IMG/VR virus record: IMGVR_UViG_3300024358_000009
Coordinates: 142,327-206,326 of that record
Direction: 5' to 3' (one strand)
Length of the DNA stretch: 64,000 nt
The position numbers and the translations under genes were made by a program. The notes below the pieces were generated by a model. That model worked only from the letters and a program-made list of their open reading frames with translations. It was not told the origin of the DNA and did no database searches. Within the stretch, counting starts at the first letter, position 1. Every line of letters begins with the position of its first letter. Of this stretch, positions 3,543 to 61,830 are shown piece by piece.

Positions 3543-3616
3543 GGGGATGTAGACCAACAGGCAGAGTCAAAGGACTTAAAATCCTTCCAGTATGGGTTCG
3601 ACTCCCATCATCCCTA
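3543..3616 (+). tRNA. tRNA-Leu(UAA), short variable loop, CCA not encoded
   Basis: Acceptor GGGGATG/CATCCCT, anticodon arm AAGGA-CTTAAAA-TCCTT, T arm ATGGG-TTCGACT-CCCAT, A73. Confidence 0.92.
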
Positions 3617-4637: not shown

Positions 4638-7600
4638 ATGAAGGATGATTTAAAGCATAGATGTGAAGACCTATATATAGTCGAAGGGGCATCTGCTGTT
4701 TTTGACTATTGCCAGTCTATTGACCATAAAGACTATGGGGATTGTGACCAATGCCAGACTTATGTTCCTATATATAAAGATTGTTGTCTTCTTTGCGGAA
4801 CAGAATTAAAAAGAGTAAACAAAACTGTATAGATAACGAATAAGTATATAAGAGAAGTTATACATAAGGAGATTAGACATGGCTTTTACTTGGAGTGCTT
4901 CAGAGTGTGATGAGAACAATATTAAAAATGTTCATAATACAGATCAGGATAGAATAGCTTGGGCTTGTTTAGATATTGGCCTGAGTGGTATTACCCTTAA
5001 GAACTATAAAGAGTTCTACAGAAGAATGAGGCTTAGGGGCGAACTGTTCAATATCTATAAGGAGTTGACGCTAAATCACATATTTAACTGTATAGGTTTG
5101 GTCACATCTGCTGCTGATTTAAGCAAGTCTGATTTTCACAAGAAGACTATAGAGCTATTTAACTATCAGGTGGAAAGAGAAATAGCTTGTGGCCGTATCC
5201 CATAGTGTTTTTGAATTGATATAACTTGTTATTTGATAAGGAGTTATGGAAATGGTTACAAACAACACCAATACACATAGATACTTTGCCGAAGTCTTCT
5301 TCCGTTCTAAGAAGGGAAACCCCTGTGCATATCATCTGTATATGGATGGTAAAGATGAGGAGGAAGTATATGGGAATATAGTAGGGAAGGTAAAGAGACT
5401 TAAGTATTTTGACAGAGTAGATAGAGTGGACATAGTAAAAATGCAACCCCTTGATAAATAAGGACTTATATCAAATGAATAATGCACAATTCGACAATGA
5501 TATTCCCCCAATGATCTTTGAATTTAGGTTCACTTCCTACAACAAACAAGGTCAAGCTTATGAATCCAATAGGATGGTCAAGGCTTGTGGTATAGATCAT
5601 GCAGTAGAGAAATTTAACGAGGAATTTACAGATTGGGGAGAAGAAGTACCAAAGTGGGATTTAATGAACATTATGGCTATTGAAAGTAAATAAATAGCTG
5701 TTAGGGCGAATATGTAAATATAAGGATGTAGCAAACATAAGGAGGGTCAAACAATGGATGATTTCAAATATTACATTGGTGAAATTCTAGAGATTAATTG
5801 TGGTTTTGAATACGAAACAAAGTACATATTTAAAATATATGAAGATGAATCTACAGATGAACATACAGATAGAGTAGCAATGAATTGGAGGGGCGGTAGC
5901 AAGCATGATTGGGATGTAAATGAGGGCTGTTATAGATGTAGTCATACATTTATCTTTGATTCTGGATGTAAGGAAATAAGCAAAGAAGAATTCGATGTAC
6001 TATCTGAACATCTTGCCATTGTATAGAAAGGCAAATCATGGATAAGTCTAAAAAAGAACTAATACATACTGTAATTAAACAGATAGTCGATGATACAAAA
6101 CATAACTATTATGAGGGTATAACAGCATTACTTAACCATATAGATACATACAAGCTTATAGCTTTTTTACCAGAAGAAATGCATGAGAAATGGAGGGGCG
6201 ATGACTTTTAAAATTTTTAGAGAAGAACTTGTACACGAAGTATTCGACATGGTTTTAAACCATATAGATAATGATGACTATTCAGTCATATGGAAGATAT
6301 TAGATCGTATGGACATATATGAGCTAGTGGCTTTATTGCCTAAAGAACAGCGTGAGAAGTGGGATAGTTCTATTGTATAAAGGAGTAAACAATGTCTTTG
6401 AATTTAAGACAACAAGTGACATACGACATATGGAACAAAGTATTTTCAAATGTAGGTAATGAACACTACCAAACCATATGCAACATACTGGATAAACTAG
6501 ATATCTTTGACCTGTTAGGCATCTTGCCCAAAGAACATCGTAAGAAGTTTGAAGGTTATGTTATTAATTCAGATGTAATGGAGAAATAACATGGAAAGAC
6601 AAGAAAAAATCAACATTTTGATGGCCCATGACATTATGCAAATTAGAGAAGATATAGAAAATGGAGATTATGAGCTTGTTTGTTCTATTCTACAGGGAGA
6701 AGGATGGGAGCAATACAATAAGCTTACAGACTACCAAATAGATGGTGAACTTGAGGACAGATTTGTTTATGTCAATTTAAATGACAAGATTATTGATTTG
6801 GCTAATAGATTAAACGGCAAGCCTATCAAGTTAGAAACATAATACCGCCACTTATTAAAATATGGAGGTATTTTGACGAATATATAAATATAAGAAGGAG
6901 GACAGACATGAAGTTAGATATTAAAAATATGTGCGTAGTATCTGGAAAAAACAAATATCAAATTTCTTTTGATGATATAAACATCGGCGATCAAGTATAC
7001 AACCCATTATCAGATGTTCTAATTCATATAGATGAAGATGATGACATTGAATATGTAAATAATAATTATTTTAAAATCTGTTAATATTTTTTAGTAAACT
7101 GCGAATAAATATATAGGAAAGGGGATTAGCAATGAATGAAAAGCTAGAAGATTTGAAATGGTTAGATGGACGAAAGGTTTTAAACTTTGTTGGTATTTTA
7201 CCAGACGATGAGCATCAAGAATGTATTGACTGCAAGTTCACAGGACAAGTTCATGCTGAGTTTGAAGTAGAAGGATTGGAAGAAGCTGAAGTAGTTTGCC
7301 CAAAGTGTGCAAGCCTACATTACTACATTGTTTAGTACCTATACATGAAGGAAATCAATCATGAAAATCAAAGTATCGGACAGGGCGATATATGGATATA
7401 TACCAACAGAAAATCCAAATGTATTTAATAGAAAAAGCGTAGTATTTATAAAAGACCGAGGTTATTTATTCCAAGAAAATTCAGTAAAGATCATTAAACA
7501 AATATTGGATGGCATCGTATATGAAATAGAAGAATCAACACCATATGATGCTAAAACGATTATGTTGGAAAATCCAAGAAGGTATAGCAAGAAAAGGTTG

Positions 7601-8341: not shown

Positions 8342-9092
8342 CTGAGGTTGTCTTCTTGGTTCAAATGGTGTAATATAATTACAGTATTACACTATAAGGA
8401 GACAACATGAAAAGCGATGTAAGAATCTTAAATGGTTATAGACTTATATTTTTGCCAGAACACTCAAGAGCTATGAAAAATAGCAATTGGGAAGGATATG
8501 TTTATGAACATATCGTAGTTGCTGAAGAATGTGTTGGTCGTAACTTAAAAGATGAAGAAGTTGTGCATCATTTAAATGGCAAAAGAGATGATAATAGACA
8601 TCAAAATCTATTAGTTCTCGAAAGAAGCCAACACGCTAAACTTCACGCTTGGATAGACTCAGGTGCTTCTGGTTTGGAAACTGCCAGAAAGAATCGGATG
8701 AATTCAATGAAAATGTCACATAATGAACCTAAATTTTGCAAAATTTGTTTTCGGACACTACAAGATAAACAATCAAAATTTTGTGGTATTGATTGTCAAT
8801 CTTTAGGAACTCGTATTGTTAATAGACCTGAAAAAAATCAATTAAAAGAAGATATTGAAAAAATGTCTTTTGTAAAAATTGGTAAAAAGTATGGTGTTTC
8901 AGACAATACGATAAGAAAATGGGCTAAGCAATATGGAATTATGCCATCAACATTGAGCCAAGCCATTGGTACACCAATGGAAGGTGCAGAGACTAGCGGA
9001 GAGGTAAAGCCCTCTTAATAACCGCACTAGCGTCCGATATCCTTATGGGATAATGATATAGTCCATGGAGGGTAGAAATACCCACAAACATG
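8342..9092 (+). mobile_element. Group I intron (751 nt) with homing endonuclease
   Basis: P1 CAU|CUGAG pairs with CUCAGGUG (8658-8665, U-G at the splice site). P3 8694-8700/9031-9037. P4 8703-8709/8951-8957. R element CAGAGACTAG at 8987, S element GATATAGTCC at 9055, terminal G at 9092. Confidence 0.9.
8407..9018 (+). CDS. Intron-encoded HNH homing endonuclease with C-terminal Cys motif and HTH
   Basis: YVYEHIVVAE...EVVHHLNGKRDDNRHQNL...H. HTH IGKKYGVSDNTIRKW. Confidence 0.9.
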   Translation: MKSDVRILNGYRLIFLPEHSRAMKNSNWEGYVYEHIVVAEECVGRNLKDEEVVHHLNGKRDDNRHQNLLVLERSQHAKLHAWIDSGASGLETARKNRMNSMKMSHNEPKFCKICFRTLQDKQSKFCGIDCQSLGTRIVNRPEKNQLKEDIEKMSFVKIGKKYGVSDNTIRKWAKQYGIMPSTLSQAIGTPMEGAETSGEVKPS

Positions 9093-9725: not shown

Positions 9726-9798
9726 GGGCGTGTAGACCAATGGCAGAGTCAAAGGACTTAAAATCCTTCAAGTATGGGTTCGACTCCCATCACGCCTA
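9726..9798 (+). tRNA. tRNA-Leu(UAA), second copy, short variable loop
   Basis: Nearly identical to 3543-3616, with a compensated acceptor stem GGGCGTG/CACGCCT. Confidence 0.92.
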
Positions 9799-18070: not shown

Positions 18071-18394
18071 ATGTTGTCAGAAAAAGAATTGCGTGAAATA
18101 GAAAATAGATTATACAGAGCAACTCCTGGTCCTTGGGTTTCTTCGTATTCTGAAAATGGAAAAACAAGCATATATTCAGAAAGTAAGGAGCGAGCATATT
18201 TTTATCATGGAGAATGGATTGCAGATGTATCTACGGAAGAAGACTTAAAATTTTTAGTTAATTCTATAGAAGATATACAAAAGCTTTTGAAAGAAGTTTA
18301 TAGGCTAAAGACTATTTTGGATAAAAACATGTATAAAGAAATTGTTGAAGCATTTTGTCATAAATTAAGTGGAAAAACAGATGACAAAAAGTGA
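18071..18394 (+). CDS. Ead/Ea22-like protein
   Basis: N-terminal LREIENRLYRATPGPW. Confidence 0.5.
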   Translation: MLSEKELREIENRLYRATPGPWVSSYSENGKTSIYSESKERAYFYHGEWIADVSTEEDLKFLVNSIEDIQKLLKEVYRLKTILDKNMYKEIVEAFCHKLSGKTDDKK

Positions 18395-18704
18395 GTTATT
18401 CAAAAGATTAAATGACATTCACATATCAAAAGTATATGTAATGTTTTCTTATGAAAATAAAGAAATATCAATAATAAGTAATGTAATTATCATGCAAGAT
18501 CAAAGTTATGTTGTTGATTGGGGCGATGATGTTTATAGTGATAAATCATACATAGTAGAACCGATATATAAATATGATTTTCAAAATTATGATAGTGTAG
18601 ATGGATTATTAACATGGGATGTATTAAAGAATAAAGTTATTATAAGTGGTGAAAAAAAGATTGTTACTCTAGAAAAATTTTCTGAAGAAGTATAGTAAAT
18701 ATAT

Positions 18705-18775
18705 GGGCGGTAGTAGTTGATTCACTAGGCAGGGAAACTTCTACTAATTAGCCTTGTTGGCTAAACCGCCCACCA
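18705..18775 (+). ncRNA. tRNA-like element 1 (7-bp acceptor stem plus ACCA, no D arm)
   Basis: GGGCGGT/ACCGCCC-ACCA, arm AGTAG/CTACT, hairpin TAGCC-TTGTT-GGCTA. Confidence 0.7.
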
Positions 18776-18788
18776 AACAAGGATTATC

Positions 18789-19697
18789 ATGGAAGAAACT
18801 TTAAAAGTTTATGATATGTTTGCTGGTATTGGTGGTTTTTCTCTGGCTTTTCAACAAGCTGGTAATTACGAAATAACAGCCAACGCAGAAATAGACAAAT
18901 ATCCTAGCGAAGTATTAAAAAAGAATTTTCCATCTATACCAAACTTTGGCGATGTTACAAAAATAACATATCAATCAAATCAGTTTGATGTGATCGTGGG
19001 CGGATTTCCTTGCACAGACATTTCTATAGCAAGTAAAACAAAGGACGGTATTTATGGAAAAAGATCTATTCTCTGGAAAGAATTCTTTAGAGCAGTCACA
19101 GAAGTCAGACCAAAATATTGTGTCATTGAAAATGTCTTTATGCTCCTTAGAAGAGGGCTTAACACAATTCTCTCAGACCTTGCCAAAATCGGGTACGATG
19201 CGACTTATACGACCATTGATGCACAATTCTGCGGAACACCACAAAGAAGACGCAGAGTTTACATTCTCGGAGTCCGTGATGGAATCTCCGCCAACGCCGA
19301 TATCTTCCAACTTGGAGAGCGTAGTACAACAGAATGTGAACGAAAAGTACAGTCTGTCAAAAAAAGCTTTAAGTGGTATTTTGAGCAGAGCGAAAAAAGG
19401 GAACAAGCCTTTGCCTACTTTACTCGCCAAAGAAGTGATCAATTTGATGAATGCGGAGTATCCTCCACATTAACTAAAAGAGATTATAAATCTTTTACAG
19501 ATTTAGTAGTGTCTAAAGGAAATATACGAAGAGTAACGCCAACAGAAAGACTTAGACTGATGGGTTTTCCCGATGATTGGCATTTAACTAATGCCTCAGA
19601 TACAGATAAGTATAAATATTGTGGAATGCATGTTCCTTCAGTTAAATATATTGCGGAATGCTTAAATAAATATCATAAGGAAACTATTAAGGATTGA
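18789..19697 (+). CDS. dcm: DNA cytosine-C5 methyltransferase
   Basis: Motifs FAGIGG (I), GGFPC (IV), ENV (VI), QRRRR (VIII) and RLMGFPD (IX). Motif X is atypical. Confidence 0.93.
   Translation: MEETLKVYDMFAGIGGFSLAFQQAGNYEITANAEIDKYPSEVLKKNFPSIPNFGDVTKITYQSNQFDVIVGGFPCTDISIASKTKDGIYGKRSILWKEFFRAVTEVRPKYCVIENVFMLLRRGLNTILSDLAKIGYDATYTTIDAQFCGTPQRRRRVYILGVRDGISANADIFQLGERSTTECERKVQSVKKSFKWYFEQSEKREQAFAYFTRQRSDQFDECGVSSTLTKRDYKSFTDLVVSKGNIRRVTPTERLRLMGFPDDWHLTNASDTDKYKYCGMHVPSVKYIAECLNKYHKETIKD
19054..19473 (+). CDS. Nested out-of-frame ORF, putative MTase beta-type subunit
   Basis: 139-aa open frame inside dcm. LESVVQQNVNEKYSLSKKALSGILSRA resembles the post-motif-VIII segment of C5 MTases. 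Confidence 0.55.
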   Translation: MEKDLFSGKNSLEQSQKSDQNIVSLKMSLCSLEEGLTQFSQTLPKSGTMRLIRPLMHNSAEHHKEDAEFTFSESVMESPPTPISSNLESVVQQNVNEKYSLSKKALSGILSRAKKGNKPLPTLLAKEVINLMNAEYPPH

Positions 19698-19699
19698 TC

Positions 19700-20335
19700 A
19701 TGTTTGATTTTGCAAAAGCAGCGCCAACTTTTAATGAACACATTAAAGGTCAATTATTTTGGCATGAAGATTTTTTAAGACATTTCTTGCCAGAAATTGC
19801 ATCTGTATATATGGAACCAGATAGTGTGGTATATGATTTTGGGGCAAGTACAGGCAATGTTGGATTAGCATTAAGAGATAAAATAAAAGAAAGAAATATT
19901 GAGTTTTATGCTATTGAAAAATGTCAAGAAATGGAACCGTACTATATTGGTGATTATCAAAGTCTAATAATAGGCGACATGCTAGATATATGTATAAGAG
20001 AGTTTTCTTTCGCAACAAGTATTTTAGCATTGTGCTTTATTCATCCAAGTAAAAGAACTGACTTTATAGAAAAACTTAAACACAAATGTAAGAATGGTGG
20101 AGCATTTTTAATTTTAGAAAAAATGATGCCTCATGGTGGCTATCTTGGTACTGCCTTAAATCGTATTACTTGGAGAAATAAATTAGAAAATGGCGAGTCT
20201 CTTGAACAAGTTGTATACAAAGAACTTTCTCTCAGCGGTGTACAATATCCATTGTGCGAAAAAGAACTAGAAGGATTTAAACTTATTTGGGCGTATGGTG
20301 ATTTTCGTTCTTATATTTGGACTAATGGCTTTTAA
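19700..20335 (+). CDS. CmoA-like SAM-dependent enzyme
   Basis: FDF...FNEHIKGQL, VYDFGASTGN and GGAFLILEK. Directly abuts the dcm stop. Confidence 0.75.
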   Translation: MFDFAKAAPTFNEHIKGQLFWHEDFLRHFLPEIASVYMEPDSVVYDFGASTGNVGLALRDKIKERNIEFYAIEKCQEMEPYYIGDYQSLIIGDMLDICIREFSFATSILALCFIHPSKRTDFIEKLKHKCKNGGAFLILEKMMPHGGYLGTALNRITWRNKLENGESLEQVVYKELSLSGVQYPLCEKELEGFKLIWAYGDFRSYIWTNGF

Positions 20336-20718
20336 TATATGGCGTATTTATATACGCTATGGAATATAGACCTTATATAGAACTGTTGATTTGGTATATA
20401 ATTTATTTTTTAATTATGTACTCTATGGAAGAAGTTCTAAATGAAAAGTAGTTATTGTCGAATAAACTAATATAACCCTAACTCAAGGAGGATTTATGTT
20501 CAAGTTTCTTAAGAATATATTTGTAAAGTCTGAAGATCAAATCAATTTAGCTATATTAAAAACAAAGTTGCAAGATCTAGAAATAGATAACAAGGATTTT
20601 GAAATAGTAAATAATAACTTAAAAGATGAAAATAAGGAACTTACTAATAGAATAAAAGAACTAAACATTAAGCTTGATTCAATTAAAATTATATTGGATT
20701 CTATTAACAAATAATTAT

Positions 20719-20781
20719 GGGCGGTAGCAATTTACCGTGGTGGGATAAGTTGCGTGATCTTGTTGATCAAACCGCCCACCA
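20719..20781 (+). ncRNA. tRNA-like element 2
   Basis: GGGCGGT/ACCGCCC-ACCA, arm GCAATTTA/TAAGTTGC, hairpin TGATC-TTGTT-GATCA. Confidence 0.7.
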
Positions 20782-20795
20782 AGATAGGAGATAAA

Positions 20796-20990
20796 ATGGA
20801 AACAGGGAATTTAGTTTTTACAAGAAATTTTGGAGAGTCTTTTACTATTTTCACTCCATCTGGAAACATAGTAATAACACTTCTTGCAGATAAGATAAGC
20901 ATAAATAAAGCAAAAGTAAAAATAAATGCTCCAAAAGATTTTAAAATTATGAGAAATGAAATTATCAATACAACGAGGGATAAAAAATGA
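20796..20990 (+). CDS. csrA: CsrA/RsmA-like translational regulator
   Basis: LVFTRNFGESFTI...KVKINAPKDFKIMRNEI fits the CsrA pattern LxLTRxxGExIxI...IxAPxxxxIxRxEI. Confidence 0.8.
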   Translation: METGNLVFTRNFGESFTIFTPSGNIVITLLADKISINKAKVKINAPKDFKIMRNEIINTTRDKK

Positions 20991-22442: not shown

Positions 22443-22607
22443 CTATCTTATCAAATGTTAAGATGTGTAATATTTTTATTTTTAAAATAGTCATAGCTGA
22501 TATTGATAAAAAAAATAAATCTGTTAATTTTTTGTCTTGGTTGTCGAATAAAAGAGTAGATGGTTAGTGTGTTGCTAATCGTTGTTTTTTCTTTAGGAGG
22601 AAGTATC

Positions 22608-22835
22608 ATGTTGAGTTTTGTTATGGCTATTGCCATTGCTACGAGTTCTGAGACTTTGGATGGTATCAGGCTTCGTGGTGGTTCTTCTTGCTCTAATGGA
22701 AGTTGCGGTGTTGCTGCTGCTCCAGTAGTAGAAAAGAAGGCTGAAACTTCAACAAAGCAGGAAGTAGTTCAGAACTCTTGTGGTTCTGGCGGATGCAGTT
22801 CAAGGCATCGTGCTTTTAAGCTTCGTTGTCGTTAA
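22608..22835 (+). CDS. Small secreted Cys/Gly/Ser-rich peptide
   Basis: RBS AGGAGG, hydrophobic N-terminus, CSNGSC and CGSGGC motifs. Own promoter motif (22524) and terminator. Confidence 0.7.
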   Translation: MLSFVMAIAIATSSETLDGIRLRGGSSCSNGSCGVAAAPVVEKKAETSTKQEVVQNSCGSGGCSSRHRAFKLRCR

Positions 22836-29639: not shown

Positions 29640-30320
29640 TCATATATTACAATTGACATTTTTTATCTCTATTAAAGAATCTCTCCTGCATAAACTTTGA
29701 TAAAGTTCTTTATCGCTTGACCATTCTTTACCTGTCCACCATTCAAAGCCATTAAACTGATTTTTATAAAGAGAACATTCTTCATAACCGCCCATCATAT
29801 AATAATAAATACACCCAGATCTTTTTGCTAAAGTGCATTCTATTAGTGTACTTATACTTCCTAAAGATAAAGACGGTTTTTCATAATCCCAAGCAAACTG
29901 AACACCTATGAATGATTTTTTAAATAGTTTATAACAAACAAATCCTATTAGATTTGATTCATAAAAATATTGTATAGTATTTTCTAACATTAATTCATTG
30001 TCAAAAACATGTTCACTTATAAAACCTTTTTTAGATTGATATGAATTTGAAATTCTTAAAATATCTTCATTTGAAGGTTTTCCAATTTGATATTCTATTT
30101 TTTTTGCAAGTTTTTTTGTTTTTTTATGGAATTCGATTTTTGAAAGGTTGTATCTGACACTTCGAGATTGAAACCAATAATTATCCCAAGGCAACCATCC
30201 TTGCTCAAGCAAATCATCAAAGTTATCATTTATATCTGGGTAAGCAAAAATAGGTGTATAAATCAAATCTTGATTTGAAACTTTTCCAAAACCATTTATA
30301 TGATCAAATATAATTTTCAT
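29640..30320 (-). CDS. ATE1/Bpt-like aminoacyl-tRNA-protein transferase
   Basis: LLEQGW and C-terminal SLGSISTLIECTLAKRSGCIYYYM.GYE.C..YK.QF. Confidence 0.65.
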   Translation of the reverse strand: MKIIFDHINGFGKVSNQDLIYTPIFAYPDINDNFDDLLEQGWLPWDNYWFQSRSVRYNLSKIEFHKKTKKLAKKIEYQIGKPSNEDILRISNSYQSKKGFISEHVFDNELMLENTIQYFYESNLIGFVCYKLFKKSFIGVQFAWDYEKPSLSLGSISTLIECTLAKRSGCIYYYMMGGYEECSLYKNQFNGFEWWTGKEWSSDKELYQSLCRRDSLIEIKNVNCNI

Positions 30321-56043: not shown

Positions 56044-57957
56044 ATGTCAAATTGGATTCCGTTGCATGTTCACTCGCAATATTCATTGCTTGATGGACTT
56101 CCTTCTGCTGAAAGAATAGCAGATAGGATATCAGAACTTGGATTAAAAGGTTGTGCATTAACAGATCATGGATCTTTATCTGGTTCTATTTCATTTTATA
56201 AAAAGTTAAAATCCAAATCTATTGATCCAATACTTGGTTGTGAATTTTATATATGTGAAAATGAACCTACAATAAAGAATGAAGATAATAAAAAACTAAG
56301 TCATTTATGTGTTCTTGCAAAACAAGATATTGGATGGAAGAACTTAGTAAAAGCTAGTTCTATTTCTAGTTCTCCAGAAAACTTTTATAGAAAACCAAGA
56401 CTTGACCTTAAAACTCTTGCGTCTATTTCAAATGGTTCCTTTATTGTTTTTTCTGGTCACCCAGGTTCTGACTTGGGAAATTGTTTATTTACAAACTTAA
56501 CAGAAGCATATAGAGCAGAAACATTTGAACACGCCAAGTCATTAATTGATCCTAATTGGGAAAAGAAAGCTACTGATCTAGCATATAAATACGCAGACTT
56601 ATTTGGAAAAGAAAACTTTTACTTAGAAATACAGTTAATAGATTCTGAAAACATACCAGCGACTAAAATAATAGCTAAAGCTTTAAGACATATAGCAAAA
56701 AAGCACGGTTTCAAAACCGTTGCTACACCAGATGCTCATTATGCAAGAAAAGAAGATGCTGTTGACCAAAGAGTTTTGTTAGCTTGTTCGATGAAAAAGA
56801 CATTAAATGATATTAGAAATCATATTCAAAACGATGAAGACTTTGGTTTTTCTGGTTTTTTTAAATCAAATAATTATCATATACCGTCTTTTGAAGAAAT
56901 TTCTAAATTAAACTCTAATGAAGAGATAGAAAATACATTTGAAATATTTAACAGGTGCAAAGATTATAGTATTTTGAAATCTCCTATGTTGCCAAAAATA
57001 ACTGGAGATAGTTCATCGTCATCAGAAATAAAAAGACTCTGTAGAGAAGGTTGGAAAAAAAGATTTTCTTTTAAAAAAGAAGACCCAAAATTTAATCAAT
57101 ATGGAGATAGAGTCACTAAAGAATTAGAAGTTATAACTTCTGCTGGCTTAGAAGACTATTTCCTAATTGTTTATGATTATTGCAATTGGGCGAGAGAACA
57201 GGGGTGGCTTATTGGCAAAGGTCGTGGATCTGGCGCTGGATGTATGGTTAGTTATTTATTGGGAATTACTGAAATAAATCCAATTGAAAACGGATTATTG
57301 TTTGAAAGATTTTATAATTCTGGTCGTAATGCTCCAGGAAGAATTAGTTTGCCAGATATTGATTGTGATTTCCCAATATCAAAAAGAGAAGAGATTATTA
57401 ACTATATTAAAAACAAATATGGTAATGATAAAGTTTCTCAAATATCTGTTTTTACAAGAATGCAAGGCCGAGGTGCTTTAAAAGATGTTTTGCGTATTCA
57501 CGCTGCTTGTAGCTTTGAAGAAAGCAATCTAATAACAAAACATATTCCAGATGAAGCTGAAATAACCGAAGAATTACAAGAAATGAGAGATGAAGGACAA
57601 GAACCTTCTATAATTAGATGGGCCTTAGAAAATTGCCAAAAAGATTTAGATCCATATTGTAAACTAAAAGATGACGGAACATTAGAAGGTCAATATGCAA
57701 AATACTTTGCCCAAGCAATAAGGATGGAAGGAACTAAAAGATCACAAAGCAAACATGCTGCTGGAATAGTAATTGCCTCTGAGAATTTACAAAATATATG
57801 CCCTATGATTTATGATAAAACATCTCATGAAAATATAGCTGGATTAGAAATGTCTGATCTTGAATCTATTGGGCTTGTTAAATTTGATATTCTTGGGGTT
57901 GCAGTTTTGGATAAAATGATGGGCGTTCAAAAACTTCTTGCTGGAGAAAGTTTATGA
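56044..57957 (+). CDS. dnaE: DNA polymerase III alpha, part 1 (PHP and catalytic palm/thumb)
   Basis: HVHSQYSLLDG, TDHG, GRGSGAG, PDIDCDF, HAAG, ending after KFDILG. No intein. Confidence 0.93.
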   Translation: MSNWIPLHVHSQYSLLDGLPSAERIADRISELGLKGCALTDHGSLSGSISFYKKLKSKSIDPILGCEFYICENEPTIKNEDNKKLSHLCVLAKQDIGWKNLVKASSISSSPENFYRKPRLDLKTLASISNGSFIVFSGHPGSDLGNCLFTNLTEAYRAETFEHAKSLIDPNWEKKATDLAYKYADLFGKENFYLEIQLIDSENIPATKIIAKALRHIAKKHGFKTVATPDAHYARKEDAVDQRVLLACSMKKTLNDIRNHIQNDEDFGFSGFFKSNNYHIPSFEEISKLNSNEEIENTFEIFNRCKDYSILKSPMLPKITGDSSSSSEIKRLCREGWKKRFSFKKEDPKFNQYGDRVTKELEVITSAGLEDYFLIVYDYCNWAREQGWLIGKGRGSGAGCMVSYLLGITEINPIENGLLFERFYNSGRNAPGRISLPDIDCDFPISKREEIINYIKNKYGNDKVSQISVFTRMQGRGALKDVLRIHAACSFEESNLITKHIPDEAEITEELQEMRDEGQEPSIIRWALENCQKDLDPYCKLKDDGTLEGQYAKYFAQAIRMEGTKRSQSKHAAGIVIASENLQNICPMIYDKTSHENIAGLEMSDLESIGLVKFDILGVAVLDKMMGVQKLLAGESL

Positions 57958-58206: not shown

Positions 58207-58872
58207 ATGAATAATTCAACTATAGTTGTTTTTGATTTTGAAACTGGTAGTGTAAACCCAGAAACTTGTGAAGTTATACAAGTTGCAGCGATGGCTTTGC
58301 ATCCAAGAAGTTTAACTGAGCTTGGTCAATATAGCAGCTTGATTAAACCAAGGGATTTTTCAAAATTGGAAAAAGAAGCTCTTGAAATAAACAAGAAAAG
58401 CATTGAAGAATTAGAAAAGGCTCCAGATCTTTCTATTGTTTGGAAATCTTTTACATCGTTTATTAAAAAATATAATCCAAAACCAGGAAACACTTTCTTT
58501 GCTCCAATAGCAGCTGGAAAAAACATTAGGCATTTTGACTTAATTATTATTAATCGTTTAGCAAAAGAATTTGGCGATTGTGATAAAAACGGAAAACAAA
58601 ACTTATTTAATAAAAGAAGCGTTTTTGATTTAGATGATTTTATTTTTCAATGGTTTGATAATTCTAATGAACTCCGTGATCATAAAATGGATACTTTAAG
58701 AGAATTTTTCGGTCTTTCTACAGCAAATGCTCACGATGCATTAGTAGATGTTAAACAAACAGCTTTACTATTGAAAAGTTTTATTCAACTACATAGAAAA
58801 GTAGCTACGAGAGTTAACTTTAAAAACTCTTTAAATGAAAACTCTGGTACTGCAAAGGGCTTTATATCTTGA
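58207..58872 (+). CDS. DEDDh 3'-5' exonuclease (DnaQ-like)
   Basis: DFETG, N..FD and HDALVD. Confidence 0.85.
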   Translation: MNNSTIVVFDFETGSVNPETCEVIQVAAMALHPRSLTELGQYSSLIKPRDFSKLEKEALEINKKSIEELEKAPDLSIVWKSFTSFIKKYNPKPGNTFFAPIAAGKNIRHFDLIIINRLAKEFGDCDKNGKQNLFNKRSVFDLDDFIFQWFDNSNELRDHKMDTLREFFGLSTANAHDALVDVKQTALLLKSFIQLHRKVATRVNFKNSLNENSGTAKGFIS

Positions 58873-59809: not shown

Positions 59810-60739
59810 ATGAAAATAGAAAAGAATTTTTGGAATAAATGTTTTCTATGTAATAAAAACTTACATGAAATTAAAAAATTTTATGGAGGCTCTAATGTTT
59901 ATTTTTCTAAAGCCATGGCTCAACATATAGTTTCTCATAAAATCTCTTTAGAAGACTATTTTGAAAAAATAGTTAAAATAATAAGACCTATTTGTAAATG
60001 CGGAGAATGCAATAAAAAAACAAAAATAATTTTAAGAAATAAAAATAAAAACGGTTTTTTCTGGAAAGAATATGCATGTGGTAGATACGAAGGATCAAAA
60101 AAATGGTCTAAAGATGCAAAAATTTCTAGAATTGGTAAAAACAATCCAATGTTTGGCAAAAAACCTTGGAACTTAGGGATGAATAAGAAAAATTCAGAAT
60201 ATGGTAAAAAGATGTCTTTGTATAGGATTGGTAAAAAAACATCAAAAGAATCTAAAAACAAACAATCAATATCTGCTAAAAAAAGATTGATTCATGGTCA
60301 TACAGGAATTAAACATTCAGAGTTTTCAAAAAAATTAATGTCTATAGCTACTTTAAACAGAATTAAAAAAGGAGCTTTTAAACATACAAAAACCAAGCCT
60401 CATTTATTAATGAAAAGTATTTTACAAAAATTAAAATTAAATTTTGAAGAAGAAAAGATTATAGAATGTTGGATTTTTGATTTTTGGTTAAAAGATTATA
60501 ATTTATTTATTGAAGTAGACGGAGATTATTTTCATGTTAATCCAAAGATTTATCCAAATGGGCCAAAAACGAATACTCAAAAGATTAATTTTTATAGAGA
60601 CAAAGTAAAAAATAAGTTTTGTCTTGATAATAAACTAAAACTTATTAGATTTTGGGAAAGCGATATTTTAAATAACGAAGGCATTATAATAAAGGAAATA
60701 CAATGCAGCCTGAATCAATCGTGTCAATTAAAAAAATAG
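59810..60739 (+). mobile_element. Free-standing homing endonuclease (NUMOD3 repeats plus Vsr-like/EDxHD domain) between the intein halves
   Basis: NPMFGKKP and HSEFSKKLMS, then DF...IEVDGDYFH...RD...IRFWE. Confidence 0.85.
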
Positions 60740-61830
60740 GAATTATTGAAACATTAGATATTGAAGTTGATAATGAAGAACATATCTTTTATGCGAATGG
60801 AATTGCGGTATCAAACAGTCACAGTTCCGCCTATGGCTTTACTGGATATGATACAGCTTATTTAAAAAGTCATTTCCCAGTACAATTTTTTACGAGTTGG
60901 CTTTTTTACGCAAAAGATAAAGCTGATAGCTCTCAAGAAGTTGCCGATCTAATAGACAATGCAAAGCTTTATAATATAAATGTATATCCTCCAGATATCA
61001 GAATGTTAAAGTCAAACTTTTATACTGATGGGGAATCTATTTGGTTTGGCTTGTCCGATATAAAAGGAATAGGTACTTCACAAATAAGTAAACTTATTTC
61101 TTGCTTCAATTCTCAATCTGAAAAAATAGATAGTTGGATTAAATTTTTAATTTATTGTTCAGACTCTATTTCTTCTACATCAGTAGCAAAAGTTATTGCT
61201 GTCGGCGGTTTTGATTGGTGTGGCGAGTATAGACAAAAACTTATATCTGAATTAGAAACTTGGAATCAATTAACAGAAAAAGAAAAAGAATGGATTAAAG
61301 AAAATTGCAAAGAAACAAAAAATCTTAAAGAATGCATTTTAGCTTTATCAAAACCTAAAAAAGAAGGTGGTGGATGCAGTAATAAAAATCGTATTTCATT
61401 AACATCTGATTTATATAATATGTTAGAAAATCCTCCAACTGAATATAATGATCCAATATCTTGGAAAGTTTGGTCAGAAAGAGAAAATCTTGGCATAGCA
61501 CTATCATGTTCATTAACGGATGGAATAGAAAATCAATCTGCTAATACAACATGCAAAGAATTTTATTTTGGTAAAACTGGATTTATGGTATTGTCAGTTG
61601 AAATATTAGATGTTAAAGAAATAGTTACAAAAAATGGAAAAGATCCTGGTAGAAGAATGGCTAGATTAACTGTATCCGATTCTTCTTGTAAAATAGACAA
61701 TGCTATAATATTTCCAGATGCTTACGAAATGCATCTAGATAAAGTATTTGTAGGAAATACTGTTTTGATTCGTGTTGATCGTGATCGCAAAACAGATGCT
61801 ATGGTTTTAAAGGACATTAACCAACTTTAA
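60703..61830 (+). CDS. dnaE: Split-intein C-half (60703-60816) fused to DnaE part 3 (HhH and OB fold)
   Basis: IVSIKKIG...DIEV...HIFYANGIAVSN|SHSSAYG...YLKSHFP and GLSDIKGIG. Confidence 0.92.
   Translation: MQPESIVSIKKIGIIETLDIEVDNEEHIFYANGIAVSNSHSSAYGFTGYDTAYLKSHFPVQFFTSWLFYAKDKADSSQEVADLIDNAKLYNINVYPPDIRMLKSNFYTDGESIWFGLSDIKGIGTSQISKLISCFNSQSEKIDSWIKFLIYCSDSISSTSVAKVIAVGGFDWCGEYRQKLISELETWNQLTEKEKEWIKENCKETKNLKECILALSKPKKEGGGCSNKNRISLTSDLYNMLENPPTEYNDPISWKVWSERENLGIALSCSLTDGIENQSANTTCKEFYFGKTGFMVLSVEILDVKEIVTKNGKDPGRRMARLTVSDSSCKIDNAIIFPDAYEMHLDKVFVGNTVLIRVDRDRKTDAMVLKDINQL

What the first reader, a model, noticed from the sequence alone, without database searches (positions are those of the whole stretch)
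18705..20781. Two covarying, D-armless tRNA-like RNAs with encoded CCA ends (candidate new ncRNA family)
Seen: intergenic elements at 18705-18775 (71 nt) and 20719-20781 (63 nt) share an identical 7-bp stem GGGCGGT/ACCGCCC followed by ACCA. Each has a 5-bp hairpin with the same UUGUU loop but different, still fully paired stems (TAGCC/GGCTA and TGATC/GATCA), and a single middle arm of unrelated sequence (AGTAG/CTACT and GCAATTTA/TAAGTTGC). There is no D arm, TTC loop or 7-nt anticodon loop. The three real tRNAs in the window do not encode CCA, but these do. They sit directly upstream of dcm and csrA. Inference: a three-way-junction tRNA mimic. Possible roles are a chargeable non-ribosomal amino-acid donor (the phage has an ATE/Bpt-like transferase), a decoy for tRNA-targeting defence toxins or uncharged-tRNA sensors, or an RNase P/Z processing signal for the downstream mRNA. 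I do not recognise the family.
Basis: partly seen in the sequence, partly recalled or inferred. Interest (0 to 1): 0.88.

Follow-up and report, generated by a model that had tools for sequence, protein, structure and literature searches.

The report
tRNA-derived RNA structure before phage csrA
Two small folded RNA elements between phage genes are real and conserved, and they descend from a leucine tRNA gene that lost its anticodon arm. They most likely mark where a long messenger RNA is cut or protected, and are unlikely to be a new chargeable tRNA.

Summary
Window 18705-18775 and 20719-20781 are the only two copies of a three-helix element closed by GGGCGGT/ACCGCCC and followed by ACCA. They lie directly before dcm and csrA. 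ARAGORN and Rfam do not recognise them.

Relatives change the reading. The same element sits between a coiled-coil ORF and csrA in a small clade of freshwater phages. All three helices are kept by compensatory changes: 100% of cells paired and 14 of 18 pairs changed on both sides. G-U pairs and model scores show it works as plus-strand RNA.

The ACCA tail is not a family feature. The sister strain has CTCT. More distant relatives extend the closing stem by seven leader/trailer pairs, and some lack the middle arm.

In those distant relatives the 5' half is 25/34 identical, in register, to the phage's own tRNA-Leu(UAA). This points to a tRNA gene that lost the 3' half of its anticodon arm. The middle arm therefore derives from the D arm.

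Best reading (confidence 0.45): an exapted tRNA relic acting in cis as an mRNA processing or stability mark. RNase P is a plausible nuclease in this strain only. A chargeable or decoy tRNA mimic is unlikely (about 5%). This is a new, narrowly distributed RNA family of moderate interest.

The parts
18705..18775 (+). Element e1 (71 nt). H1 is 18705-18711 paired with 18765-18771. The middle arm H2 is 18712-18716 with 18741-18745, with GGCAGGGA in its loop. H3 is 18748-18753 with 18759-18764, loop TTGTT at 18754-18758. The tail ACCA is 18772-18775. It starts 9 nt after the stop of ORF 18369-18695 and ends 13 nt before the dcm ATG.
20719..20781 (+). Element e2 (63 nt). H1 is 20719-20725 paired with 20771-20777. 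H2 is 20727-20736 with 20743-20753, with GGTGGGA at its tip. H3 is 20755-20759 with 20765-20769, loop TTGTT at 20760-20764. The tail ACCA is 20778-20781. It starts 4 nt after the stop of the coiled-coil ORF and ends 14 nt before the csrA ATG.
18789..19697 (+). dcm (C5 cytosine DNA methylase), the gene served by e1. Together with ORF 19694-20335 and e1 it is an insertion relative to the sister strain.
20496..20714 (+). 72-aa coiled-coil ORF. It is the conserved upstream partner of the element and csrA, and has its own promoter-like motif at 20457.
20796..20990 (+). Phage csrA homologue, the gene preceded by the element in every relative. The RNA-binding motifs align to RsmE (2jpp).
9726..9798 (+). 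Phage tRNA-Leu(UAA), with no encoded CCA. It is the closest relative of the element's presumed ancestor. It too lies about 24 nt before an SD and ATG on the same strand.
3543..3616 (+). Second tRNA-Leu(UAA) gene of the same unusual type, with no encoded CCA.

Best explanation
e1 and e2 belong to a small family of 58-71-nt three-helix RNA structures transcribed within plus-strand polycistronic mRNAs. Each fills the gap between the stop codon of one gene and the Shine-Dalgarno sequence of the next. That next gene is csrA in every relative, and additionally dcm in this strain. The family descends from a phage tRNA-Leu(UAA) gene that lost the 3' half of its anticodon arm. The closing helix (formerly the acceptor stem) and the hairpin abutting its 3' strand (in the T-arm position) are kept everywhere. 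The middle arm (formerly the D arm) is optional. I propose it works in cis as a tRNA-relic punctuation mark: a stable, nuclease-recognised fold that uncouples the upstream cistron from csrA or dcm and gives the downstream message a defined, structured 5' end next to its ribosome-binding site. In this strain the fold has U at -1, G1-C72, a 12-13-bp helix stack and A73-CCA. RNase P cutting 5' of G1 is therefore a plausible nuclease, and the encoded CCA would block RNase Z, so the fold would stay attached as a 5' cap on the mRNA. In relatives with extended stems another enzyme such as RNase III, or simple protection, would do the job. Shown: the structure, its conservation, the active strand, its position and its tRNA ancestry. 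Inferred: cleavage, the nuclease involved and any effect on expression.
For: Structure and selection. A hand alignment of 9 variants has 18 pairs and no unpaired cell. The model-fitted alignment A9 is 100% paired, with 14/18 pairs changed on both sides; 0/500 shuffles reach this, and slid controls are 35-45% paired. Within the distant group alone there are compensatory double changes in all three helices.

Homology across groups. A covariance model trained only on distant relatives ranks e1 (E 8e-4) and e2 (E 0.011) first and second in the 64-kb window, and the phage tRNA-Leu third (E 0.036). A second model finds the untrained sister-strain copy at E 6e-6.

Strand. Plus-strand scores are 43-82 bits against 10-14 bits for the minus strand, and there are G-U pairs.

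tRNA ancestry. The distant-group 5' half is 25/34 identical, ungapped and in register, to tRNA-Leu 9727-9760, while the maximum over 200 shuffled queries is 23. Global alignment gives z 5.3-6.1, 0/300 shuffles. The match is specific to the Leu(UAA) type: mean score 43.7 against 21.2 for 56 other tRNAs.

Position. The element always lies between a stop codon (4-9 nt upstream in group A) and an SD. The genuine tRNA-Leu at 9726-9798 occupies the same kind of slot, about 24 nt before an ATG.

Core. Forms without the middle arm keep the closing helix plus hairpin, which is the minihelix.

The fold persists as an independent domain when flanks are included. Established knowledge, not tested here: bacterial RNase P cleaves acceptor/T-stem minihelices and some operon mRNAs; CCA is an anti-determinant for RNase Z; plant mitochondrial t-elements define mRNA ends (PMC3711453, citing Forner 2007).
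Against: There are no transcript-end data, because the phage is known only from metagenomes. The features that make e1 and e2 good RNase P substrates (free ACCA, U at -1) are absent from the sister strain and from all distant relatives, whose 14-bp closing stems would hinder RNase P. The family-wide function therefore cannot be RNase P cleavage as such. The two hairpin loops carry conserved sequence (GGYRGGG and N-Y-G-T-T), which a mere structural obstacle would not need; this points to a bound factor or a loop-loop contact that this model does not explain. Similarity of the group A copies (e1, e2, sister strain) to tRNA-Leu is weak on its own (z 1.4-2.1), so their tRNA ancestry rests on homology to the distant group. 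The family is small, about six independent sequence types, all from freshwater samples.
Confidence: 0.45

Rival explanations
1. Translational operator. The fold displays two conserved loops that bind a protein which sets csrA (and dcm) translation. One version is autoregulation by the phage CsrA dimer, bridging a GGA in the middle-arm loop and the GGA of the Shine-Dalgarno sequence.
For: Loop sequences are conserved while stems covary, which is the classic signature of a protein-bound hairpin. GGGA lies in the middle-arm loop of e1, e2, the sister strain and most distant relatives, about 40 nt from an SD containing GGA. The phage CsrA keeps the LxxTR, NAPK and R-x-E-I motifs that align to RsmE. 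A hairpin with the same G/UUGUU loop and covarying stems precedes a third gene at 22559-22583.
Against: Two distant variants (L154, L174) read GGTGGGCAAAGG and have no GGA in the loop. Four variants lack the middle arm altogether. The best-conserved loop (N-Y-G-U-U) has no GGA, and no candidate binder for it was identified. An SD containing GGA is not specific evidence.
Confidence: 0.2
2. Relic without a role of its own. On this view it is a decaying tRNA pseudogene whose stable stem survives passively, or it serves only as short homology for shuffling gene cassettes, like the promoter/stem-loop cassettes (PeSLs) of T4-type phages.
For: It has tRNA ancestry. e1 sits exactly at the 5' edge of a dcm-methyltransferase insertion that the sister strain lacks, and ATATATGG(G)CG occurs at both junctions. 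e1 and e2 share identical ends but unrelated interiors.
Against: Compensatory double substitutions in all three helices, including helices that did not exist in the parent tRNA, with no unpaired cell in 141. The position before csrA is conserved down to 41-47% CsrA identity. Neutral decay would not keep this.
Confidence: 0.12
3. Free-standing tRNA mimic. The 63- and 71-nt RNAs are excised at G1 and CCA and act in trans, either charged as an amino-acid donor for the ATE-like transferase or as a decoy for factors that target tRNA.
For: The acceptor end is canonical in this strain: G1-C72, A73, CCA. The stem plus ACCA is identical to real tRNA-Val and tRNA-Met genes in IMG/VR. It descends from tRNA-Leu, and bacterial LeuRS needs A73 and the D/T core but not the anticodon arm (PMC2377443). 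The phage encodes an ATE_C protein and two tRNA-Leu genes.
Against: The CCA end is absent in the sister strain and in every other relative. There is no U8-A14, no T54-A58 and no G19-C56 equivalent, and the hairpin loop is 5 nt. PMC2377443 shows these core contacts are critical for leucylation. Middle-arm length varies from 5 to 11 bp, and the arm is dispensable in some relatives. There is no G3-U70 for AlaRS and no anticodon for ValRS or MetRS. The Rfam tRNA and tmRNA models give nothing at E<=10.
Confidence: 0.06
4. DNA-level signal, such as a promoter, an attachment-site core copied from a host tRNA 3' end, or a replication or priming hairpin.
For: The 3' strand plus ACCA equals the 3' end of real tRNA genes, as att cores often do. 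The distant group has a perfect TATAAT in the trailer. All hairpin loops end in GTT.
Against: G-T pairs that would be C-A mismatches on the other strand, and a strong strand asymmetry of model scores. No -35/-10 pair at a workable spacing is conserved between the groups. Both strands of the stem are present, not just a tRNA 3' fragment.
Confidence: 0.03

Closest known systems
t-elements of plant mitochondria (tRNA-like structures that define mRNA ends; Forner et al. 2007, cited in PMC3711453)
   Same: They are degenerate tRNA-derived folds embedded in longer transcripts next to protein-coding genes. They are not used in decoding and are proposed to act as processing signals.
   Different: They occur in organelles rather than phages, they keep more of the cloverleaf, and cleavage by RNase P/Z is documented for them. 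Here cleavage is only inferred, and most relatives lack a free 3' end.
mascRNA / MALAT1 and MEN-beta tRNA-like 3' modules (own knowledge)
   Same: A tRNA-like fold inside a longer RNA, recognised by RNase P, with a poorly conserved anticodon-arm equivalent.
   Different: They are eukaryotic and nuclear, they yield a discrete CCA-added small RNA, and there is no sequence relation.
Non-tRNA RNase P substrates in bacteria and phages: operon mRNAs (Li and Altman 2003), the P1/P7 C4 RNA precursor, the phi80 M3 RNA, 4.5S RNA (own knowledge)
   Same: An acceptor-like helix with a 3' RCCA in a non-tRNA transcript. The intercistronic location matches the operon mRNA cases.
   Different: None of them is reported to be a conserved three-helix tRNA relic, and no homology was detected. 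Whether e1 or e2 are cleaved is untested.
Genuine phage tRNA-Leu(UAA), window 9726-9798
   Same: In the distant relatives the 5' half is about 74% identical and in register. In e1 and e2 the first nine bases, GGGCGGTAG, match GGGCGTGTAG with one deleted base. The genomic setting is the same, directly before an ORF.
   Different: The element has no anticodon loop, no T-loop and no D-stem, its helices are re-registered, and ARAGORN and Rfam reject it.
Minimalist tRNA-Leu substrates of LeuRS (Larkin et al. 2002, as cited in PMC2377443)
   Same: Acceptor plus D-like and T-like arms with A73 and without an anticodon arm.
   Different: Those keep the canonical U8-A14, G18-U55 and G19-C56 core that LeuRS needs. 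The element does not.
Viral tRNA-like structures (TYMV-type, valylatable) and the tmRNA tRNA-like domain
   Same: An acceptor-like helix ending in ACCA with no normal cloverleaf. The stem equals that of tRNA-Val genes.
   Different: Those lie at RNA termini, keep a T-loop and (for TYMV) a valine anticodon, and are charged. There is no Rfam match here, and the CCA is not conserved.
PeSLs, the promoter/stem-loop cassettes of T4-type phages (own knowledge)
   Same: Repeated intergenic stem-loops at the borders of shuffled accessory gene cassettes. e1 borders an inserted dcm cassette.
   Different: PeSLs include an early promoter and are simple hairpins kept as sequence repeats. This element has no promoter and shows RNA-level covariation.

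Membership tests
tRNA (Rfam RF00005 / ARAGORN) | Cloverleaf scored by a tRNA covariance model or by ARAGORN | tested here: not met
   ARAGORN finds only the two tRNA-Leu genes. Rfam gives no tRNA hit on e1, e2 or the L142 copy even at E<=10 on 91-nt slices.
tRNA (Rfam RF00005 / ARAGORN) | 7-nt T-loop with the T54-A58 / G53-C61 pattern, a D-loop with G18-G19, and a 7-nt anticodon loop | tested here: not met
   The hairpin loop is T/G-T-G-T-T (5 nt, or 7 if the closing pair is opened), and there is no anticodon arm. Only a GG in the middle-arm loop recalls G18-G19.
tRNA-derived element (descent from a tRNA gene) | Significant, in-register sequence similarity to a specific tRNA | tested here: met
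   Distant group versus tRNA-Leu(UAA): 25/34 ungapped, 0/200 shuffles; global z 5.3-6.1; specific to the Leu(UAA) type. For e1, e2 and the sister copy alone the similarity is weak (z 1.4-2.1), so the link runs through family homology.
Aminoacylatable tRNA mimic (TLS-like, minimalist tRNA-Leu) | A free 3' N73-CCA end conserved across the family | tested here: not met
   ACCA occurs only in e1 and e2. The sister strain has C-TCT, and the distant group pairs the trailer with the leader.
Aminoacylatable tRNA mimic (TLS-like, minimalist tRNA-Leu) | Synthetase identity elements: for LeuRS, A73 plus the U8-A14, G18-U55 and G19-C56 core; G3-U70 for AlaRS; the anticodon for ValRS and MetRS | tested here: not met
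   A73 is present in e1 and e2, but position 8 is A, there is no C56 or A58 equivalent, pair 3-70 is G-C, and there is no anticodon. Requirements are taken from PMC2377443.
Aminoacylatable tRNA mimic (TLS-like, minimalist tRNA-Leu) | Actual charging by a synthetase | not testable with these tools
   This needs an in vitro aminoacylation assay.
RNase P substrate (non-tRNA) | A coaxial acceptor/T-type helix of about 12 bp, G+1, preferably U-1, and a single-stranded 3' RCCA | tested here: inconclusive
   e1 and e2 meet all of these: 7+6 and 7+5 bp, U-1, G1, ACCA. The sister strain has A-1 and no CCA. The distant group has a 14-bp closed stem. Cleavage itself is untested.
CsrA-regulated leader | At least two GGA motifs, one in a hairpin loop and one at the SD, 10-63 nt apart | tested here: inconclusive
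   Met in e1, e2, the sister strain and most of the distant group. Not met in L154 and L174 (no GGA in the loop) or in the four forms without the middle arm.
Known Rfam family of any kind | A score at or above the gathering threshold | tested here: not met
   the only hits are chance ones far below threshold.
Intrinsic terminator | A GC-rich hairpin followed by a U run | tested here: not met
   No T run follows e1 or e2, and the terminator scan does not list them.

The most novel reading that the evidence does not exclude
In this strain the two elements are still handled as tRNAs. RNase P cuts at G1, the encoded ACCA end is exposed, and LeuRS, which ignores the anticodon, charges them. That would make them anticodon-less, non-decoding leucine carriers, dedicated to the phage's ATE/Bpt-like aminoacyl-tRNA-protein transferase (29640-30320) or acting as decoys for tRNA-directed defence nucleases.
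Probability: 0.05. Interest if true: 0.9.

Novelty: new variant of a known kind. Interest (0 to 1): 0.5.

Why it matters
This would be a clear bacterial-virus example of a tRNA gene exapted into a non-decoding, structure-conserved mRNA element, the phage counterpart of plant-mitochondrial t-elements and of mascRNA. It shows how a tRNA embedded in an operon can lose decoding yet keep its acceptor/T-type helix, presumably because the cell's tRNA-processing or RNA-decay machinery still reads it. It also ties the control of a phage-borne global regulator (CsrA) to a defined RNA structure that can be tested with simple reporters. The strain-specific gain of a perfect A73-CCA end gives a natural pair of alleles (ACCA versus CTCT) for asking what an encoded CCA does in an mRNA leader. 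The family is small and narrowly distributed, so the general impact is moderate.

Tried and rejected
1. Exact-pattern scans of IMG/VR for the closing stem with ACCA, for the TTGTT hairpin plus 3' strand, and for GGGCGGTA...AAACCGCCC. They returned only the same phage, its sister strain, real tRNA genes (mostly Val and Met types, read from the anticodon loops), chance hits in GC-rich coding DNA, and one unrelated element.
2. MAFFT alignments of the variants (A1-A3) misplaced the helices. I replaced them with a hand alignment and model-fitted alignments (A7, A9).
3. Coding potential. A mechanical GTG ORF (20754-20990) runs through e2 in frame with csrA, but the frame is broken in the sister strain and closed by stops in the distant group. 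Rejected.
4. Promoter reading of TTGTTGxx as a -35 box. No -10 box at a usable spacing is conserved across groups. Rejected.
5. Alternative pairing of the hairpin's 5' half with the SD-proximal sequence: 7 nt in e1 and 6 nt in e2, but not conserved in the sister strain or the distant group. Treated as chance.
6. A loop-loop contact of GGYR with YGUU is possible in every variant, but it is mostly G-U and about as likely as not by chance. Left open.
7. Covariation between the closing stem and the acceptor stems of phage tRNA-Leu genes. tRNA-Leu relatives from IMG/VR have GGGAGCG or GGGGATG type stems, and none matches GGTGTCT. No support.
8. Host identification through CsrA relatives in bacterial genomes gave only ordinary bacterial CsrA. 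The phage and plasmid collections hold no close relative.
9. A search for an intact tRNA before csrA in other phages found none among the loci held.
10. A literature search for phage-encoded CsrA leaders or tRNA-like intercistronic elements in phages found nothing specific.
Full report
OBSERVATION. GGGCGGT...ACCGCCCACCA occurs twice in the window against 0.00 expected in shuffles. A general scan for 7-bp stems followed by NCCA, and for TTGTT-loop hairpins, found nothing else comparable in this 31% GC window. Both elements fold into a three-way junction: -28.3 and -28.9 kcal/mol, z -3.5 and -4.8. The reverse strands fold worse. ARAGORN finds only two tRNA-Leu(UAA) genes, at 3543-3616 and 9726-9798, and Rfam agrees. 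Neither tRNA encodes CCA. Rfam gives nothing on the elements even at E<=10. The downstream genes are a C5 DNA methylase and a CsrA homologue.

CONTEXT. Both elements are intercistronic. e1 begins 9 nt after the stop of ORF 18369-18695 and ends 13 nt before the dcm ATG. e2 begins 4 nt after the stop of a 72-aa coiled-coil ORF and ends 14 nt before the csrA ATG. There is no room for a promoter in either gap. A promoter-like motif lies further upstream, before the coiled-coil ORF. The window comes from a large phage carrying replication genes that is known only from freshwater metagenome contigs.

RELATIVES. I used the neighbouring DUF1501 protein and then an alignment of the phage CsrA proteins to fetch related loci. 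The module coiled-coil ORF, element, csrA, DUF1501 is conserved.

- Group A is the window strain plus a sister strain (the L136 type; DUF1501 91% and CsrA 76% identical). Its element keeps GGGCGGT/ACCGCCC, a related middle arm, and a TTGTT hairpin with a different, still paired stem. It is followed by CTCT rather than ACCA.
- Group B (L142, L144, L148, L151, L154, L174 and others; DUF1501 about 72% and CsrA 41-47% identical) closes with GGTGTCT/AGACACC or GGTATCT/AGATACC. Seven further leader/trailer pairs extend that stem. The middle arm is short, with GGTGGG in its loop. The hairpin stem covaries (CTAGT/ACTAG or CTGGT/ACCAG) and its loop reads GTGTT or GCGTT.
- Four further variants (L147/L178, L155/L173, L166, L179) have no middle arm at all, only the closing helix and the hairpin.

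Because e1 and e2 share 12 and 14 identical bases at their ends, even their two ACCA tails are not independent.

STRUCTURE IS SELECTED, AND ON THE PLUS STRAND. In a hand alignment of nine variants all 18 pairs are standard in every sequence, with two to five pair types at most positions. A covariance model built from group B alone (R1) ranks e1 (22.5 bits, E 8e-4) and e2 (18.3 bits, E 0.011) first and second in the whole window with filters off. A second model (R2) recovers the untrained sister-strain copy at E 6e-6 and finds no further copy in the window. It scores the plus strand at 43-82 bits against 10-14 bits for the minus strand. On the model-fitted alignment A9, 100% of 141 cells pair and 14 of 18 pairs change on both sides. 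No shuffle out of 500 reaches any of the five measures, and slid controls pair at 35-45%. The fitted alignment leans towards the structure and the sample is small, but the hand alignment and the within-group-B double changes say the same thing. G-U pairs, which would be C-A on the other strand, confirm an RNA read from the plus strand.

ORIGIN. The third hit of model R1 was the phage's own tRNA-Leu, so I tested that lead directly. The 34-nt 5' half of the group B element is 25/34 identical to 9727-9760, without gaps and in register. That stretch comprises the acceptor 5' strand, the D arm, the anticodon-stem 5' strand and the first bases of the anticodon loop. The best of 200 shuffled queries reached 23. 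Global alignment gives z 5.3-6.1, 0/300 shuffles. It places an 8-nt deletion over the 3' half of the anticodon loop and the anticodon stem's 3' strand, plus small deletions in the T region. The similarity is specific to this unusual tRNA-Leu(UAA) type: mean score 43.7 against 21.2 for 56 other tRNAs, whose maximum was 35.5.

The new middle arm pairs the former D-stem 5' strand with the former anticodon-stem 5' strand. The element is therefore anticodon-less rather than D-armless. For e1, e2 and the sister copy the direct similarity is weak (z 1.4-2.1). Their first nine bases, GGGCGGTAG, differ from the tRNA's GGGCGTGTAG by one deleted base. Their tRNA ancestry rests mainly on homology to group B.

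WHAT IT MOST LIKELY DOES. The feature kept in every variant is the closing helix stacked on the hairpin that abuts its 3' strand, which corresponds to the acceptor/T-arm minihelix. The genuine tRNA-Leu at 9726-9798 also lies about 24 nt before an SD and ATG on the same strand. In these phages tRNAs are thus already excised from mRNAs at such positions. The simplest account is that a tRNA lost decoding but kept its role as a punctuation mark. It would be a stable fold that RNA-processing or decay enzymes recognise or cannot pass. It would separate csrA (and here dcm) from the upstream cistron and leave a structured 5' end next to an accessible ribosome-binding site. The fold does persist as an independent domain in context.

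In the window strain the fold is a textbook RNase P model substrate: U at -1, G1-C72, a 12-13-bp stack, and A73-CCA. From established knowledge the CCA would also prevent RNase Z from removing it from the downstream mRNA. All of this last step is inference. In group B another nuclease, or protection alone, must be invoked. I put the punctuation or stability role at 0.45, and within it RNase P cleavage of e1 and e2 at roughly one in two.

RIVALS. Four alternatives were weighed.

- A protein-bound operator is the main rival (0.2), because the loops are conserved in sequence. CsrA autoregulation fits most variants, and the phage CsrA keeps the RsmE-like binding motifs. But two variants have no GGA in the loop, four have no middle arm, and the most conserved loop has no GGA.
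- A functionless relic or recombination scar (0.12) fits e1's position at the edge of an inserted dcm cassette. It does not fit the compensatory evolution.
It also fails on the tertiary core that LeuRS needs (PMC2377443). It is not strictly excluded for this one strain.
- DNA-level roles (0.03) conflict with the strand asymmetry.

NOVELTY. No Rfam family matches, and I found no description in the literature searched. The kind is known: tRNA-derived folds inside longer RNAs that serve processing, such as plant-mitochondrial t-elements (PMC3711453), mascRNA and non-tRNA RNase P substrates. This would be a new phage variant with a documented path from a specific tRNA gene. Interest is moderate (0.5): a solid new RNA family with a neat evolutionary story, but narrow distribution and no functional data.

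Noticed in passing
window 29640-30320 (-), with 3543-3616 and 9726-9798: A 226-aa ORF with an ATE_C domain (arginyl/leucyl-tRNA-protein transferase fold) lies in a phage that also carries two unusual short-variable-arm tRNA-Leu(UAA) genes. Bpt-type transferases use Leu-tRNA, so the pairing may not be accidental.
   Followed up: partly
window 1616, 11018, 11770, 20457, 22543 (+): The motif G[AT]CGAATAA is followed within a few bases by a TATATATAG-like box. Five copies sit just upstream of an SD and ATG, all on the + strand, and 6 matches were found against 2.6 expected. The same motif precedes dcm in the sister strain (L420). It is probably a phage-specific promoter.
   Followed up: partly
window 22559-22583 (+); L136 about 7514-7534; L154 about 5666-5686: A hairpin with the same G/TTGTT loop as the elements' hairpin is followed by a T run. 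It lies before a 75-aa Cys/Gly/Ser-rich ORF (22609-22835). Its stem differs and stays paired in the three phages.
   Followed up: partly
window 18696-20342 versus L136 5290-5320: e1, dcm and the 213-aa ORF form one insertion relative to the sister strain, with ATATATGG(G)CG at both junctions. In group B the dcm pair sits at two different places and is preceded by a different conserved hairpin (TGTAAGAAA-N12-TTTCTTACA) right before the SD.
   Followed up: partly
IMG/VR 3300024509_000007 (221 kb) and 3300024358_000009 (206 kb): loci L131/L140 and L132/L141: The 100% and 91% versions of the csrA-DUF1501 module lie exactly 149,856 bp apart in both contigs. Relatives have genomes of about 150 kb. 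The long contigs are probably wrap-around assemblies joining two strains, so the '91% copy' is an allele and not a paralogue.
   Followed up: partly
window 56044-57957 and 60703-61830 (+): The family-B DNA polymerase is split into two ORFs about 2.7 kb apart, with an RNase_T-like exonuclease ORF (58207-58872) and others in between.
   Followed up: no
L316 204-276, L344 11715-11787, L339 5097-5163, L302 (minus strand): An unrelated 67-73-nt element with the same GGGCGGTA...AAACCGCCC closing stem occurs in 36-39% GC viral contigs. Rfam gives no hit. In L344 it fills the gap between two minus-strand genes and abuts a start codon.
   Followed up: partly
window 8407-9018 (+): An HNH endonuclease ORF with a zinc-finger/HTH tail lies about 700 nt upstream of tRNA-Leu 9726-9798.
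   Followed up: no
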